DNA from: Paramoeba atlantica
Lineage: Eukaryota > Protista > Discosea
Assembly (NCBI GenBank): GCA_977017575.1
Contig: CDRNVI010000002.1
Location: 62,001-126,000 of the forward strand
DNA length: 64,000 nucleotides
Direction: 5' to 3'
The position numbers were made by a program, and so were the translations under genes. Under the pieces are notes generated by a model. That model was not told the DNA's origin and made no database searches. It was given only the letters and a program-made list of their open reading frames with translations. Positions within the stretch are counted from its first letter, which is position 1. Each line of letters begins with the position of its first letter. Shown here piece by piece: positions 3,008-58,339 of the stretch.

Positions 3008-3388
3008 ATCAATTACATGTATATTAAACAAAATTTCCCTACAATAGCAGTGAAAAAATGTCGCTGGTTCCTAGCACTCGATGACAGACTGTGTAAGAAA
3101 AGAAAGCTTCAAACATATAAAAAACTTTTCTATACTGCCACTCATTAACAATTCTGGGAAAATATCAGATGAAGGTAAAAACCTAAGCATTCATAATTCT
3201 CAAGCATTCAATCGAAGCCAGCGATGCGATATTTCATCATAGAAGTACATGTTCAATATTGTTCCCTCATTATTTATCACATGCCAGTCCCGGGTTGTCA
3301 TGTCAACATCTACATTTGTAGATCTATGTACAGTTGTGGATGTTGTTTTTCAATCGTTACCAAGTAATGTATCACTCTTTTCTTAATA

Positions 3389-3720
3389 CTGTACCCCCCC
3401 GTTTATAATAGCCTCGATTTTGCCCAAATGAACCTATAAAGGGGGGAGGGCGATGGAAGATTAAAAGTTGGCACCGAAATCGCCCTACATTTTATAGCGA
3501 GGATCAAATAATTATTCAATCGCTAAGTGTGCCCCGGCGATCTGCCAAAGTAAAATGTCCAGTACCACCCCGCGCCATACCTCGCAGAACTATGTGAAAA
3601 TAAATATCAAAATCTTTAAGACGGTGCAAGAAAATTGAAAAAGTCTTCCTTGGTTTGCCAAAAAAAAGAACCTATAAAGGGGGGGAGGGGTCGAGGCTAT
3701 TATAAACAGAGGGGGTACAG
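3389..3720. mobile_element. MITE-1: 332-bp non-autonomous Tc1/mariner-superfamily (pogo-like) element
   Basis: TIRs ctgtacccccccgtttataatagcctcga (3389-3417) and tcgaggctattataaacagagggggtacag (3691-3720), flanked by TA at 3387-88 and 3721-22. Subterminal motif gaacctataaagggggg(g)aggg at 3430-3450 and 3668-3690. Confidence 0.85.
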
Positions 3721-22174: not shown

Positions 22175-22215
22175 TTTTTCATTGTAGCAACCTGCTATCT
22201 GCAGACTCTCCATTA

Positions 22216-24056
22216 CTGTATTCCTCTTTATATTTTCACTGTTTTTGTCCACGTTTTTTTCAATAATCGAGGATAGAGCGGTAGTTGTACAACCACCTCA
22301 ATAATTAATTCCAACATGGAGAGACAGAGGTTTCGACATCGGCACCTGAATTTTAGTTGCGGTGTACATGTGCCGCATGCTCGTATGTTCACCACATGTA
22401 GACCACAAGGTTGCAAGAAAGCAAAACTAGACCTAGAGATGATGATTTCATTATGCTTTCATTTCATGAAACCGCAACGAAGATTCAAAAAAAAAATCTA
22501 GAGCATCGATTCTGAATCGCATATACAAATGTAAATTTATGTACATACTTTCAGCAGTTAAACATACGAACCATCACACTCGAGGATCTGGAGGTACGCC
22601 CTCTAATTTTCCCAGGCGTTTTAGATTTTGGACTCGAATTGCATTGATCCGCTTTTCGTTAAAAGGAACAAAAGCCTCGTTGTCTAATCTGTGTATTAAG
22701 CGATCTCCAGCGCTTCTCCACTCATGTCCAAATTTAGAAATCAACGAAGCACACACTGAAAACGGAAGATCCTCGAATGTTCGAATGAGGTGCGTAACTC
22801 GGTGAAAATGAAATGCAGCTTTCCACACGCCGGCTCGAACAGCGGCTTGTATGCTGGGGGGAAAGTTTTCTTCGGGAAAGGCTCCCTTAGTATTCATCTC
22901 GGTGATCTCGCCGAGTGCCTCTATCCACCGTCCCGCGCATAAAAGTATGTTGGTGTTGTTCGGATAAAGACACACAAGATGGTTCCATGTAAGAGAACTA
23001 TACAAGGGTCGAAGAATGGCTATCCATTGTCGCCATTGTGAGCTCTCTAGAGCAAATGCAATATGAGACAAAGTTCTGTTATTTTGCGTATTGACGGGCA
23101 TAAAGGATTTGGGGGCCGTAAGTGGATTAAAAAATTCGGCAGCCAACCTCCACTGGTGCAATTGCAGAGCATGTTGTAGCACAGTAAGCTTTATCAAAGG
23201 GGTAGTGGGTACATGTGCAGAGGAACGAGATGTATAGAATGCGCGAAGATAGTGAACAAGGCGCTGGGCAATCTGAACTTGGTAAAAGTACTGTGGAGGA
23301 ATTTTCGCCTGAAATGATCGAGGCATAGGATGCAATCCAGGAGAACTCACGAAGAGTTTTACTGCAGTTTTCCATTCTCCTGCCTTGCAAAGTTCGGATA
23401 TGGCTGTGTGTCGAACAGCACTGGGGATAACAGAGCCATGAGGACCTTGTAGGATACGGCCTAGTTCACACCAGTGAGAAGCCCGAGCCAGCATAATACT
23501 ATACTCAGTGGCAAGCCGTAATCCATTCGACAATAAGTATGAGGTCGGAGAGTCCAGCCATGATAACAGATTATGTAACTGTTCGGCTTGTTGGTGGCGA
23601 CACAAAAGGGTCAGCATTCGTTCGACTTGAAGGAAATGAGGATCTCTATGCTTCATGTGAATCCGTAGAAATTGGCTGAGTGAAGCCTGCCACGAAGTTG
23701 GAACTGTAGTTGCGAGAACGCCTTTCGTGCTCTGGCGGTTAATGCATACGATAACACTGGCGCGCCTATACATTAATAATTATCTTTACGACAGTGTCCT
23801 AAAGACGCAAGACTTGGCCCAGACACGTGTATTCTTTTTTCGTAGTCTTACCTGTGTGATACACATTTGCTGTGTGCGTCACAATGTTGACCAACGGGGC
23901 ACACAACATACATAGTGTGTAACATGGCAAATAAGAGAAAATAACTTACAATCTTGTTTATTAGTTACAAGGTTGCGGTGGTTGTATAACTACCGCTCTA
24001 TCCTCGATTATTGAAAAAAAGTGAACAAAACAGTGAAAATATAAAGAGAAACACAG
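22216..24056. mobile_element. Candidate Pack-type TIR element: 82/80-bp inverted repeats with TA flanks enclosing a PPR-like gene
   Basis: 22216-22297 and 23977-24056 are inverted copies (76/82 aligned positions); TA at 22214-15 and 24057-58. Outer ends begin CTGT(A/G)TT(C/T)CTCTTTATA, similar to the MITE-1 TIR. Confidence 0.5.
22574..23773 (-). CDS. Degenerate PPR-like helical-repeat protein, probably mitochondrial
   Basis: PPR-like motifs AVRHTAISELCKAGEWKTAVKLF, SIQAAVRAGVWKAAFHF and ILLCAGRWIEALGEI; Arg/Ser-rich N-terminus. Confidence 0.5.
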   Translation of the reverse strand: MYRRASVIVCINRQSTKGVLATTVPTSWQASLSQFLRIHMKHRDPHFLQVERMLTLLCRHQQAEQLHNLLSWLDSPTSYLLSNGLRLATEYSIMLARASHWCELGRILQGPHGSVIPSAVRHTAISELCKAGEWKTAVKLFVSSPGLHPMPRSFQAKIPPQYFYQVQIAQRLVHYLRAFYTSRSSAHVPTTPLIKLTVLQHALQLHQWRLAAEFFNPLTAPKSFMPVNTQNNRTLSHIAFALESSQWRQWIAILRPLYSSLTWNHLVCLYPNNTNILLCAGRWIEALGEITEMNTKGAFPEENFPPSIQAAVRAGVWKAAFHFHRVTHLIRTFEDLPFSVCASLISKFGHEWRSAGDRLIHRLDNEAFVPFNEKRINAIRVQNLKRLGKLEGVPPDPRV

Positions 24057-24123
24057 TAATAATAATAGAAGAAAAAAATATAAAAGGGGGCTCCGGTGGT
24101 CCAAAAAAAAATATGAAAAGAAT

Positions 24124-55340: not shown

Positions 55341-56390
55341 TTAGTCTCTGTGTATTTCAGGAATCTCAACTGAAACCGGGGGGGTTGTCCTTTCATAAGC
55401 TTCGAGTACAAGCAACTGAAAGGGTACGCCTGACTCATACTGTAGTGAACTGTCTGGCTCATACGTATTCAAAAACATACTCTGCATTCCTCCTGTCGGT
55501 TCTACCTTTTTGCGCAAATTTACGAATGTATCTGCCAGGGAACTTTCTTCTGGCTCTTGTGTCTCCGGAGGCTTAAATGTATCTATGTTACTTGTTTCTT
55601 CTTGTTTCGTAGAATGCAATGTCTCATCGTATCTCGACCTCAACTCTGCAAGCAAAGCGGACTTTCGACGCATAGGGAATTCTTTTAACTCAACTCCTGT
55701 TAACAGAGCGTATATGAAGGTTAGATCGCGCAGTGGAATAGCTTCTAGCTGAATTCGTCGCTCAAATAATCGATGAAAATGCAAAATACTTGTTCTGAGT
55801 AAATCTAGTGCTCTACCTGAGGTGGTGAAAAGTTTCGTCCACAACTCTGCAGCGTACGATGCGGATATGGGCTTTGACGATAGGTCATCGTTTGCCACAA
55901 ATTCTACTAGGTTCGAAATTTCATATTTTTCGACTAATTCCTCTGTTTTGTTCAAAAGCTCATTTATAACGACATTAGTACAGTGCATTGGTGGCTCGTC
56001 CGTGAGTTTGAGCCTTGCATTATCTTTGGAAGTGGGCACTGGCTCATGAGGTGACACATACATGCAAGTATCAGTGTACCCCTTTTCGAGAACTTCAGAC
56101 AAAAGCAGCTCTATCTGTTCAATAGATTTTCGGAGAAGATGGTTTCGAAAAGCATCGTTTGAGAACACGTCAAGACCATCCGATGTAAGACGTGAAAAAG
56201 TTCCCTTAGTCATCTCCCGACGGGACAATCGACGGGATTTATTTCTCACGCACATAAAAATCGTCAAAGTGACTGTTTCTAAAAGTATTTCATTGTAAAG
56301 TTGACTATATTGTCGCTGAACACAGTAGCTGTACGAAGTAAATGCATACGAGAGAAAACAGAGTCTAACTAAGCAAAGAAAGGAAACCAT
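55341..56390 (-). CDS. Hypothetical protein (true start probably downstream of 56390)
   Basis: 349-aa ORF co-oriented with the array; no recognisable motif. Confidence 0.6.
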   Translation of the reverse strand: MVSFLCLVRLCFLSYAFTSYSYCVQRQYSQLYNEILLETVTLTIFMCVRNKSRRLSRREMTKGTFSRLTSDGLDVFSNDAFRNHLLRKSIEQIELLLSEVLEKGYTDTCMYVSPHEPVPTSKDNARLKLTDEPPMHCTNVVINELLNKTEELVEKYEISNLVEFVANDDLSSKPISASYAAELWTKLFTTSGRALDLLRTSILHFHRLFERRIQLEAIPLRDLTFIYALLTGVELKEFPMRRKSALLAELRSRYDETLHSTKQEETSNIDTFKPPETQEPEESSLADTFVNLRKKVEPTGGMQSMFLNTYEPDSSLQYESGVPFQLLVLEAYERTTPPVSVEIPEIHRD

Positions 56391-56408
56391 TGACCAACCA
56401 TTGACATA

Positions 56409-58254
56409 CAGTAAACGTCACTATTCTGAGAGTCGCTAAAAATGAGAATTGGGCTGTCAACGTACAACTGGCCAAAATGAGAATGCACTTTGAAAAATGA
56501 GAATGGGGCTTCGGCCACACATGTCAACGTTCAATTGAATTCGATACTCAAAAATGAGAATAGAAAAAAATAACTTTCTTTTAATCACTGCTTAACTCTT
56601 TTCGTATTCTTTGCTCACTGCTTAAACTCGCTGCTTACTCTTCCTGAACACCCATGGTCGTGAGAACCATCCTGTCCATCATGTTCATCATACCAATGTT
56701 GTCTTCGCCACCTTCTTCTTCCTCTTCTTCTGTATCAGTTTCTATGAACGAATCTTCGACGGGTTCATCGAATCGAGAAATTGCTTCATCAACATCGATG
56801 AATCCCTGTTCTTGAAGAGCGGTGTTCGGGTCCAAGTTGGAGTGATACTTTTTTTGACCAACCCAAGTGCCCTGATTTGGGATGTACCCCCCGCTTGACC
56901 AGCATGAGCGAATCTTGTCCCGAGAAATTGAATTCCATGCGTTCCTCGCTAAGCGCATCATGACGTCCCAGGTAGGAGTATATTCGGATGGATTCCCACT
57001 CTTCTCGGCCTCGTCCTGCACAAGAATTCTGTATTGGTGTTTGAACATCTTGATAATTCCCAAATCTGCCGGCTGCCAAACATGGGTCAAGCCTGCTGGG
57101 CCAAAAAGAACTGAACCCCCTCTATAGCCGTACTCATTGCTCTGCCGCAACACATCAGGAAGATGGCGATGACCCTCAAAACGGTCCAGTAGCCACAAGA
57201 ATCTGCCAGACATCAAGGTTTTCATACGTTCAAATATAGCGGTTGAGTTACGTGCGTCTGCCCATGCATTGCGTTGTATGTGCACGGAGCCGTCGTTTTG
57301 ATAGCGATGTGCTAAGTTTTTGGGATTTCGCGACTTGGGATTCGGCTCCCCTTTCAAAACGAATGATAGTGGCATCTTTTCTCCCGCCATAGAAGTACCA
57401 ATAAAAATTGTAACCCGGGTTTTGGACTTTATGTTGGACATGGCTTCCGGAGAAACAGTGCCTTTCTTGCAATAGACGTGTTTCGTTCCGTGCGAAATGA
57501 GAAGTCCAGTTTCATCAACATTCCAGACTCGGGCATCGCCGTATGTTAAGGTGTGGAAGCGTACTTTCTGCACGAAGCTTACCACTTCTGTATCCCAAGA
57601 CGGAGATAATGTCTTCTTTTCTTGAGCAAGACGACGTGTAAACCCGTTTTTCTTTATGAGTCTTCGAATCCAACAATCTAGCGCATTTTGTTTGCCAACG
57701 AATTTGTCCCCAGTGATGCTTCGCACATAAGAAGCAACCTGCTTTATTGTAAATTGCATGGTTTTCTCCATCCAAGATTCCACCTGCGATTTCAGAGTTA
57801 AATGGCCTAGATGACGCGAGACGCGAGCATGCTTGCTCTTTGGTTGAGCAGAAGAAATGCTATCCAAATCCTGGAACCAGCGGTATACAGTTTTTCGAGG
57901 AACATCAATAATGCCGTTTGCAAGGCTATGTTCCATTTTTGCTGTCAGAGTGTCGCCGGGACTACGCCTCACGAGCTCAATAACCTTAAGTTTTTCCTCG
58001 TTCGATAAGCCCATCAAAGAAAATTATTAAAAAGTGTTTAGTAAGATCTGGCAAAGACAAGAGTAAGAATCCATCGGTGAGCGATTGCATTAAAAACTTT
58101 TTTTTAAAAATGAGAATTATGATATGACCTCATAAATAAGTGCCTGTCAACGTTCAACAGACCAATTCTGAGAATAGTGACGAAAAACGACAAAAAAGCC
58201 GTTTTGTGTGTGTCAACGTACAACTGAGCATTCTGAGAATAGTGACGTTTACTG
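56409..58254 (-). mobile_element. Full-length pogo-family (Tc1/mariner superfamily) DNA transposon, 1846 bp
   Basis: TIRs cagtaaacgtcactattctgaga (56409-31) and tctgagaatagtgacgtttactg (58232-54), 22/23 complementary; TA TSD at 56407-08 and 58255-56; single intact transposase ORF. Confidence 0.93.
56635..58014 (-). CDS. pogo-type DDE_1 transposase (two HTH domains, DD39D, acidic tail)
   Basis: HTH (VPRKTVYRW), Tc5-like HTH (WIRRLIKKNGF), catalytic WNVDETG / LLDRFEGH / WQPADLG; 39 residues between D2 and D3. ATG at 58014. Confidence 0.92.
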   Translation of the reverse strand: MGLSNEEKLKVIELVRRSPGDTLTAKMEHSLANGIIDVPRKTVYRWFQDLDSISSAQPKSKHARVSRHLGHLTLKSQVESWMEKTMQFTIKQVASYVRSITGDKFVGKQNALDCWIRRLIKKNGFTRRLAQEKKTLSPSWDTEVVSFVQKVRFHTLTYGDARVWNVDETGLLISHGTKHVYCKKGTVSPEAMSNIKSKTRVTIFIGTSMAGEKMPLSFVLKGEPNPKSRNPKNLAHRYQNDGSVHIQRNAWADARNSTAIFERMKTLMSGRFLWLLDRFEGHRHLPDVLRQSNEYGYRGGSVLFGPAGLTHVWQPADLGIIKMFKHQYRILVQDEAEKSGNPSEYTPTWDVMMRLARNAWNSISRDKIRSCWSSGGYIPNQGTWVGQKKYHSNLDPNTALQEQGFIDVDEAISRFDEPVEDSFIETDTEEEEEEGGEDNIGMMNMMDRMVLTTMGVQEE

Positions 58255-58339
58255 TACTTACTAGGAAACCAATTTGACCAACCATTGACATACTTGAGAT
58301 ACTTAAAGGGCAGAATGTACCTTTGATACACACCGTTGA

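What the first reader, a model, noticed from the sequence alone, without database searches (positions are those of the whole stretch)
56409..58254. Apparently intact cut-and-paste pogo transposon in a kinetoplastid genome
Seen: TA TSD, 22/23-bp TIRs and an uninterrupted 459-aa transposase with both HTH domains and a complete D-D-D triad spaced DD39D, long for pogo elements. Established: the annotated TE complement of model trypanosomatids (T. brucei, T. cruzi, Leishmania) is retroelements (ingi/L1Tc, SLACS/CZAR/CRE, VIPER, TATE), with no active class II elements generally described. Inference: a recently active DNA transposon, possibly horizontally acquired (for example from an amoeba host if this is Perkinsela), and a candidate genetic tool.
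Basis: partly seen in the sequence, partly recalled or inferred. Interest (0 to 1): 0.8.

Follow-up and report, generated by a model that had tools for sequence, protein, structure and literature searches.

The report
Young pogo-type DNA transposon in kinetoplastid
This is a real, intact cut-and-paste "pogo-type" jumping gene that has moved very recently in the genome of a deep-branching relative of trypanosomes, a group long thought to have almost no such elements.

Summary
Window 56409-58254 is a 1,846-bp element with 22/23-matching 23-nt inverted ends, a TA duplication, and one open 459-aa gene (Pfam DDE_1; D167/D277/D317 = DD39D). The fold model shows two helix-turn-helix bundles and a Mos1-like core.

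It is mobile. The assembly holds three independent full-length insertions. Two of them, this one included, face a precisely empty single-TA site on the sister contig. There are also about 99 matching termini genome-wide and a ~1.04-kb non-autonomous family up to about 100% identical between different TA sites.

The host is a kinetoplastid. All large ORFs share one strand, and an Mre11 tree puts it in Prokinetoplastina beside the Perkinsela clade.

Transfer from an amoeba host is not supported. The closest full-length relative (31%) is an unreported TA-flanked element in Bodo saltans. Older dead sibling families sit in the same genome, and element GC equals host GC.

In the papers I could search, only inactive Merlin relics are described for kinetoplastids. 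This is therefore a new lineage and a new host group for a known kind of element.

Other agents of this scan have already noted pogo-type and other DNA transposons elsewhere in this genome.

The parts
56407..56408 (.). left copy of the TA target-site duplication
   Evidence: the sister contig C12 has a single TA here
56409..56431 (+). left 23-nt terminal inverted repeat (starts CAGTAAACGTCAC)
   Evidence: I1; the same terminus occurs at 25 exact and many near-exact places in the genome
56438..56565 (.). left subterminal repeats: four TGAGAAT-containing motifs and two TGTCAACGTnCAA motifs; probable extra transposase binding sites (inferred)
   Evidence: families D1-D3, D8; conserved in the non-autonomous copies
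56635..58014 (-). transposase gene, 459 codons plus stop, ATG at 58012-58014
   Evidence: Pfam DDE_1 E 3.7e-16
57853..58002 (-). predicted first helix-turn-helix bundle (aa 5-54)
   Evidence: AlphaFold model, pLDDT about 90; no Pfam hit at threshold
57649..57801 (-). predicted second helix-turn-helix bundle (aa 72-122). In the alignment it lies in the part where 40 of 71 aligned relatives carry HTH_Tnp_Tc5
56890..57642 (-). RNase H-like DDD catalytic core (aa 125-375). D167 = 57514-57516, D277 = 57184-57186, D317 = 57064-57066
56683..56868 (-). acidic, predicted disordered C-terminal tail (aa 383-444)
   Evidence: pLDDT under 50
58015..58231 (-). 5' leader with pyrimidine tracts followed by AG about 45 nt upstream of the ATG (candidate spliced-leader acceptor, inferred). 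Also holds the right subterminal repeats, including an internal second copy of the inner TIR at 58167-58182
   Evidence: (I4, D1-D3)
58232..58254 (-). right 23-nt terminal inverted repeat. It carries the family-wide single asymmetry: C instead of G at position 20
58255..58256 (.). right copy of the TA target-site duplication

Best explanation
Window 56409-58254 is an autonomous member of a divergent, kinetoplastid-associated lineage of the pogo superfamily (IS630-Tc1-mariner group).

Proposed mechanism:
1. The 459-aa transposase binds the 23-nt terminal inverted repeats, and probably the repeated subterminal motifs, through two N-terminal helix-turn-helix bundles.
2. It cuts the element out with its D167/D277/D317 RNase H-like core.
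3. It reinserts the element at a TA dinucleotide, which is duplicated.

History in this genome. The family has been active very recently. This copy and the C42 copy are present on only one of two sister contigs. The enzyme has also mobilised in trans a roughly 1.04-kb non-autonomous derivative family.

Expression. Kinetoplastid genes lack their own promoters. Expression is therefore most likely by read-through of the host polycistronic unit, since this copy lies in the sense orientation, followed by spliced-leader trans-splicing at a pyrimidine-tract/AG site in the element's leader.

Shown and inferred. Shown: anatomy, family membership, copy number, TA duplication, empty sites and host affiliation. 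Inferred: the cut-and-paste chemistry (by homology), DNA binding by the HTH bundles, the expression route, and present-day activity.
For: Anatomy:
- TIR, TA and ORF.
- Pfam DDE_1 E 3.7e-16.
- DD39D with all three D conserved in 71 relatives.
- AlphaFold model at pLDDT 81.8 with two three-helix bundles plus a catalytic core.
- Best structural matches are full-length Mos1 transposase (E 8e-8), Metnase and Sleeping Beauty.

Mobility:
- Four full-length copies at 98-100% identity occupy three sites.
- A precise empty site at C12:307037-307038 has one TA, with 98.8% identical flanks over 2,852 bp.
- A second empty site lies at C26:14443, opposite the C42 copy.
- Seven paralogous empty sites of a host repeat each show an exact 2-bp overlap around a non-autonomous copy.
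- 17 of 17 independent insertions are flanked by TA.
- Non-autonomous copies at different sites are 95% to about 100% identical.
- There are 99 TIR termini against 0 for the control.
- Public-run contigs from three runs show the empty-site join. Two runs also show an internal-deletion derivative with 31 nt of filler.

Host:
- All 26 ORFs of at least 250 aa lie on the minus strand.
- Mre11 best hits are all kinetoplastid.
- The Mre11 tree puts the host in Prokinetoplastina at 99% support.
- An SL-like 17-mer recurs 11 times.
Against: - No RNA evidence was obtained, so expression and trans-splicing are inferred.
- No excision footprint was found, so 'cut' as opposed to 'paste' rests on homology.
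- Short-read contigs break at the element ends, so no independent read bridges a junction by 31 nt or more.
- Pfam does not recognise the N-terminal DNA-binding domains in this protein.
- The copies differ from each other by 0.7-1.8%, so the last movement need not be ongoing today.
Confidence: 0.88

Rival explanations
1. The family entered this genome recently by horizontal transfer, for example from an amoeba host or from prey, and is not an old kinetoplastid resident.
For: The transposase has no close relative. A word search of 5.8 billion proteins returned only itself. The best foreign full-length hit is 31% identical. ITm elements are well known for horizontal transfer (general knowledge). 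Another agent of this scan read the host as an amoeba symbiont.
Against: The closest full-length relative is in another kinetoplastid, Bodo saltans, inside its own TA-flanked TIR element. The query, Bodo and three metagenomic proteins form a clade with 96% support. The same genome holds degraded sibling families at 48-60% amino-acid identity with related TIRs, which implies long residence. Element GC 0.438 equals window GC 0.443. No donor-like sequence was found.
Confidence: 0.1
2. The family is real but already extinct. The intact ORF is a survivor, and nothing moves today.
For: The full-length copies differ by 0.7-1.8%, and one carries a TAG stop. No RNA evidence was obtained.
Against: Three of four full-length copies keep the complete open frame. 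Two of three sites are present on only one sister contig. Three non-autonomous copies at different sites are about 100% identical.
Confidence: 0.15
3. Assembly chimera or contaminant DNA joined to kinetoplastid genes.
For: Short-read contigs do not bridge the junctions.
Against: The two flanks are contiguous on the sister contig with exactly one TA, which a chimeric join would not produce. The same termini sit in more than 35 contigs of uniform GC. Runs from three samples hold the element and its flanks.
Confidence: 0.02
4. A domesticated pogo-derived host gene (CENP-B or TIGD-like) rather than a transposon.
For: The ORF is intact and lies in the sense orientation within a host gene cluster.
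Against: It has TIRs and a TSD, is multi-copy, and is absent from the allelic site. Domesticated genes are single-copy, fixed and lack ends.
Confidence: 0.01

Closest known systems
pogo superfamily of IS630-Tc1-mariner transposons (pogo, Tigger, pogoR, Fot, Lemi, Passer, Mover; Gao et al. 2020, PMC7386202)
   Same: DDE_1 catalytic domain, DDD triad, TA duplication, short TIRs, a single ORF of about 450-500 aa, a bipartite N-terminal HTH region, and non-autonomous MITE-like derivatives.
   Different: It is only about 20-30% identical to other members. In this protein Pfam does not recognise CENP-B_N or HTH_Tnp_Tc5. It falls in a small separate clade with a Bodo saltans protein and metagenomic proteins. 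The host group, Kinetoplastea, is not mentioned in the main text of that survey. A search of its held supplements for five protist names, Bodo and Perkinsela among them, found nothing. I could not assign it to a named pogo family.
Bodo saltans CUF70078.1 / A0A0S4ISW5 (annotated 'hypothetical protein', DDE-1 domain), within CYKH01000386.1
   Same: Closest full-length relative (E 3e-36). It has the same long D2-D3 spacer with a shared GPAG-TH-WQP-D motif (DD38D against DD39D). It sits in a ~1.76-kb element with 24-nt TIRs and flanking TA (L035:1374-3133).
   Different: Identity is 28-31%, the TIR sequence is unrelated, and the aligned part of the Bodo protein starts only at query residue 110. 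I did not check its copy number or activity.
[quoted passage not shown] 2021, PMC8101967)
   Same: They are the only DNA transposons reported so far from kinetoplastids, and they too are absent from trypanosomatids.
   Different: They belong to a different superfamily (DDE_Tnp_IS1595). They are described as few, divergent and inactive, and the Perkinsela copies lack TIRs and TSDs. The element here has perfect ends, TSDs, empty sites and young derivatives.
Mos1 mariner transposase (PDB 3HOT, 3HOS, 5HOO)
   Same: Best structural match over about 398 aligned columns: two HTH domains plus an RNase H-like core, TA target, cut-and-paste.
   Different: Sequence identity is about 13-14%. Mos1 is DD34D and belongs to a different Pfam family.

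Membership tests
pogo superfamily (ITm group) | DDE_1 (PF03184) catalytic domain | tested here: met
   E 3.7e-16, 59.6 bits against a cut-off of 22, covering profile positions 1-177 of 177. 70 of 71 aligned relatives also match.
pogo superfamily (ITm group) | D-D-D catalytic triad | tested here: met
   D167, D277, D317. D277 is invariant; D167 and D317 are conserved in at least 90% of 71 sequences. Spacing 39 lies within the published pogoR and Lemi ranges.
pogo superfamily (ITm group) | TA target-site duplication | tested here: met
   17 of 17 independent insertions. Empty sites show a single TA.
pogo superfamily (ITm group) | short terminal inverted repeats | tested here: met
   23 nt, 22/23 matching. 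The termini are conserved across the family.
pogo superfamily (ITm group) | N-terminal CENP-B_N / HTH_Tnp_Tc5-type DNA-binding domains | tested here: inconclusive
   Pfam finds only sub-threshold HTH_32 and HTH_23. AlphaFold predicts two three-helix bundles. 40 of 71 relatives carry HTH_Tnp_Tc5 and 12 carry CENP-B_N.
pogo superfamily (ITm group) | placement inside a named family (Tigger, pogoR, Fot, Lemi, Passer, Mover) | not tested
active autonomous DNA transposon | intact ORF, insertion polymorphism and young trans-mobilised derivatives | tested here: met
active autonomous DNA transposon | demonstrated excision or transposition, or excision footprints | not testable with these tools
   No footprint was seen at the two allelic empty sites. 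This needs an assay or population data.
domesticated pogo-derived gene (CENP-B/TIGD type) | single-copy, fixed, without TIRs or TSD | tested here: not met
   Multi-copy, has TIRs and TSD, and the allelic site is empty.
Merlin (the DNA transposon already reported in kinetoplastids) | DDE_Tnp_IS1595 transposase domain (PMC8101967) | tested here: not met
   Pfam reports DDE_1 only. The TSD here is the dinucleotide TA.

The most novel reading that the evidence does not exclude
This may be an ancient, kinetoplastid-specific pogo lineage with a DD38-39D core. It would be shared by the two deepest kinetoplastid branches, Prokinetoplastina here and Bodo saltans in Metakinetoplastina. It would have been inherited from the kinetoplastid ancestor and lost in trypanosomatids. 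It would still be transposing here, in a genome without gene-specific promoters, expressed only through polycistronic read-through and spliced-leader trans-splicing. If so, it would be the first live class II element of Kinetoplastea, and a native tool for insertional mutagenesis in the group.
Probability: 0.3. Interest if true: 0.65.

Novelty: new member of a known kind. Interest (0 to 1): 0.55.

Why it matters
Kinetoplastid genomes are a textbook case of a mobilome made only of retroelements. A 2025 survey of 57 trypanosomatids found no DNA transposon (PMC12278014). The only earlier report for the wider group is of inactive Merlin relics (PMC8101967).

This element shows something different: an intact pogo-type transposon with hemizygous insertions and near-identical non-autonomous offspring. 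So cut-and-paste elements can live and move in a polycistronic, trans-splicing genome. The absence of class II elements from trypanosomatids is then a loss, not a feature of the whole class.

It also gives a matched transposase, ends and natural mini-element. These could be tested as a homologous mutagenesis system.

The unreported relative in the published Bodo saltans assembly means the claim can be checked in a culturable organism.

Tried and rejected
- The word-index protein search with the transposase returned only itself. The exhaustive search was needed.
- A sequence search of the PDB gave nothing, even at E 10.
- Rfam on the whole window gave no match.
- Naming the other clades of the transposase tree failed. 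All 20 looked-up representatives except the Bodo protein are unnamed metagenomic or Logan proteins.
- A search of the held supplements of Gao et al. 2020 for Excavata, Bodo, Naegleria, Trichomonas and Perkinsela found nothing.
- I tried to sample 20 further contigs, to test whether the assembly mixes an amoeba with the kinetoplastid. That question stays open. Shared repeats across many contigs and uniform GC speak for one organism.
- The 20-nt repeat on both sides of the element (56390-56409 and 58274-58293) looked like a long duplication made by insertion. The empty allele has the same repeat, so it pre-dates the insertion.
- Public-run contigs could not bridge the junctions, because they break at the repeat.
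- The prokinetoplastid SL 17-mer matched only with one mismatch, and the reversed control also gave 9 hits. That test is weak on its own.

Full report
**1. Observation**

- The sequence at 56409-58254 is as described.
- The repeat finder gives one terminal inverted pair, 56407-56431 against 58232-58256. It is 25 nt including the flanking TA and 96% complementary, so the TIR proper is 23 nt with one mismatch.
- The single mismatch (G on the left, C on the right at position 20) is a family trait. Left ends across the genome read ...TTCTGAG and right ends read ...TTCTCAG.
- One ORF fills the element on the minus strand, 56635-58017, which is 459 aa from the ATG at 58012-58014.
- Both ends carry subterminal repeats: TGAGAAT-containing motifs and TGTCAACGTnCAA motifs. 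The right end also has an internal second copy of the inner TIR at 58167-58182.

**2. The protein**

- Pfam finds DDE_1 (PF03184) over the whole profile, E 3.7e-16.
- The triad is D167 (NVDET), D277 (LLDRF) and D317 (QPADLG). D1-D2 spacing is 109 and D2-D3 spacing is 39.
- In an alignment with 70 relatives, D277 is invariant. N165, D167, E168, H282, Q314, P315, D317 and K325 are conserved in at least 90% of sequences.
- Pfam does not detect an N-terminal DNA-binding domain in this protein. Only sub-threshold HTH_32 and HTH_23 appear.
- Among the aligned relatives, 40 of 71 carry HTH_Tnp_Tc5 and 12 carry CENP-B_N.
- An AlphaFold model (mean pLDDT 81.8, pTM 0.71) predicts four regions:
  - a first three-helix bundle at residues 5-54;
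  - a second three-helix bundle at residues 72-122;
  - an alpha/beta core at residues 125-375;
  - a disordered acidic tail at residues 383-444.
- Foldseek against the PDB ranks full-length Mos1 mariner transposase first (3HOT, E 8e-8, about 398 aligned columns). The Metnase and Sleeping Beauty catalytic domains follow.
- The architecture is therefore that of an IS630-Tc1-mariner transposase of the pogo (DDE_1) kind.
- The DD39D spacing is inside the published range for pogoR (DD29-59D) and Lemi (DD29-42D), so it is not exceptional (PMC7386202).

**3. Mobility**

The assembly is 45.7 Mb in 248 contigs, and the window is C2:62001-126000.

*Full-length copies and empty sites*

- There are four full-length copies at 98-100% identity: C2, C42, C3 and C85.
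- C3 and C85 are the same site on two sister contigs, so there are three independent sites.
- C2, C3 and C85 keep the open frame. C42 has one TAG stop.
- The window's flanks recur on contig C12 at 98.8% identity over 2,852 bp without gaps. There the element is absent and a single TA stands at C12:307037-307038.
- C2 and C12 share other insertions in the same order over about 1 Mb. They are therefore two haplotypes or very young duplicates, and this copy is present on only one of them.
- The C42 copy likewise faces an empty site on C26, with one TA fewer.

*The non-autonomous family*

- A non-autonomous family of about 1.04 kb shares the first ~190 bp and the last ~155 bp with the element. Its ~700-bp interior is unrelated.
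- All 17 copies examined begin and end with the same termini, and 16 of the 17 are flanked by TA on both sides. In the seventeenth (L029) a 9-nt duplication inside the right end shifted my boundary, and a TA follows the true terminus.
- Copies at different sites are 95% to about 100% identical.
- One of these copies sits in a host repeat. Seven other copies of that repeat are empty, each with an exact 2-bp overlap of the two flanks.
- Across 17 independent sites (3 full-length, 14 non-autonomous), TA is the only fixed target feature.

*Genome-wide count and public runs*

- The 22-nt terminus occurs 99 times at up to 2 mismatches, against 0 for the reversed control.
- Contigs from three public runs of one study show the join 56406>58255, which is the empty form.
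- Two runs show an internal-deletion derivative, 56682>57951, with 31 nt of filler. That is the kind of product expected from interrupted gap repair.
- These contigs break at the element's ends and do not bridge a junction.

**4. Host**

- All 26 ORFs of at least 250 aa in the window lie on the minus strand, which is the kinetoplastid polycistronic pattern. The transposase ORF runs the same way.
- The window's Mre11 has kinetoplastid best hits only. The closest named ones are Prokinetoplastina sp. PhM-4 (54%) and Perkinsela sp. CCAP 1560/4 (53%), ahead of Trypanosoma brucei at 48%.
- A maximum-likelihood Mre11 tree places the host in Kinetoplastea (100) and in Prokinetoplastina (99). It is sister (90) to a long-branched Perkinsela clade, not inside it.
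- A 17-mer one mismatch from the published prokinetoplastid spliced-leader motif (PMC7859406) recurs 11 times. The control count makes this weak on its own.
- The species is not resolved. Another agent of this scan proposed the symbiont of Paramoeba atlantica, and others called the host a free-living relative of trypanosomes.
- I could not sample more contigs to test whether the assembly is mixed.
- Shared repeats on many contigs and uniform GC of 0.40-0.49 fit one organism.

**5. Relatives and origin**

- The word search found only the protein itself.
- The exhaustive search found 719 relatives at E 0.001 or better, but only 28 at E 1e-10 or better.
- The best full-length one is Bodo saltans CUF70078.1 (E 2.8e-36, 31%), annotated as a hypothetical protein.
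- In the Bodo contig that gene lies between 24-nt inverted repeats flanked by TA, making an element of about 1.76 kb. Its triad is DD38D, and it shares the motif around the third D.
- In a tree of 122 proteins, the query, the Bodo protein and three metagenomic proteins form a clade with 96% SH-aLRT support.
- The same genome also holds degraded sibling families at 48-60% amino-acid identity with several stops. Their termini differ by one or two bases (CAGTAAAAGTCAC...), and they again occur on paired contigs.
- Element GC is 0.438 and window GC is 0.443.
- Together these points argue for long residence in kinetoplastids rather than a recent gift from an amoeba. Horizontal transfer among free-living kinetoplastids cannot be excluded.

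**6. How it most likely works**

- By homology with Mos1 and Tc1, the transposase binds the ends through its two HTH bundles and pairs the ends. It excises the element with the DDD core and integrates at TA, which gap repair duplicates.
- The non-autonomous family keeps the ends and subterminal motifs and is moved in trans.
- Kinetoplastids transcribe genes in long units. The simplest expression route is therefore read-through plus trans-splicing.
- The sense-strand leader has pyrimidine tracts followed by AG about 45 nt before the ATG.
- These steps are inferred.

**7. Novelty**

- Lopes et al. 2021 (PMC8101967) report Merlin as the first DNA transposon in kinetoplastids. They describe few, divergent copies, call them inactive, and find no TIRs or TSDs in the Perkinsela copies.
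- A 2025 survey of 57 trypanosomatids found no class II element (PMC12278014).
- The main text of the 2020 pogo survey does not mention kinetoplastids, and a search of its held supplements for Bodo and Perkinsela found nothing.
- Searches for Bodo saltans with mariner, for Euglenozoa with pogo, for Prokinetoplastina with transposable, and for Perkinsela with transposon found no description of such an element.
- It is therefore a new lineage and a new host group of a known kind of element, not a new mechanism.
- Other agents of this scan have already noted pogo-type elements (including a pogo-Ulp1 fusion), Tc1, IS30-like, P-like and other DNA transposons in the same genome. This element is one part of a rich class II complement.

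**8. Verdict**

- Observation: confirmed.
- Interpretation: partly supported. It is an active-looking pogo element in a kinetoplastid. Acquisition from an amoeba is not supported.
- Interest: moderate, 0.55.

Noticed in passing
G000 contig pairs, e.g. C2/C12, C3/C30, C3/C85, C90/C48, C21/C32, C14/C23: Almost every repeat copy turns up twice, on two contigs in the same order. Flanks are about 1.2% diverged, and C2 and C12 are colinear over about 1 Mb. The 45.7-Mb assembly looks like two phased haplotypes of a roughly 23-Mb genome.
   Followed up: partly
L035:1374-3133 (Bodo saltans CYKH01000386.1): The published Bodo saltans assembly holds a ~1.76-kb pogo-like element with 24-nt TIRs, flanking TA and a 452-aa DD38D ORF annotated only as 'hypothetical protein'. 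I found no paper that mentions it.
   Followed up: partly
window 56390-56409 and 58274-58293: An exact 20-nt direct repeat brackets the insertion. It is also present in the empty allele on C12, so it is a pre-existing local tandem repeat and not a product of transposition.
   Followed up: yes
L016:614-1655 and sister copies (e.g. G000:C12:585349-586390): The ~700-bp interior of the 1.04-kb non-autonomous family is unrelated to the autonomous element and has G-rich stretches. Its origin (captured host DNA or another element) is unknown.
   Followed up: no
L003:1440-1500 and 3348-3420 (G000:C3 around 864623-866469): The C3/C85 copy is inserted into a short palindromic repeat whose two halves are inverted copies of each other. 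This is probably another MITE-like element with many copies in the genome.
   Followed up: no
G000:C3:563159-564733, C2:1072785-1075489 and their sister contigs: Older, stop-riddled sibling pogo families at 48-60% amino-acid identity, with termini differing by 1-2 bases. A further MITE-like subfamily with terminus CAGTAAAAGTCACAATTCTGAG occurs at a dozen or more sites.
   Followed up: partly
window 56682-57951, seen only in public runs X1 and X4: A deletion derivative of the element lacks 1,268 bp and carries 31 nt of filler at the join. I did not see it in the assembly copies I examined.
   Followed up: no
G000: C3:645507, C10:202831, C14:91767, C23:255057, C42:14573, C51:68764, C51:236532, C58:186125, C60:234233, C99:99070, C99:154376: Eleven dispersed copies of ATACAGTTTCTGTACTT, one base from the published prokinetoplastid spliced-leader motif. 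They could be SL RNA genes or SL-targeted elements.
   Followed up: no
window 22214-24058: Another first-reader note on this window flags a host-like gene enclosed by TA-flanked 82-bp inverted repeats, a Pack-type transposon candidate. I did not examine it.
   Followed up: no
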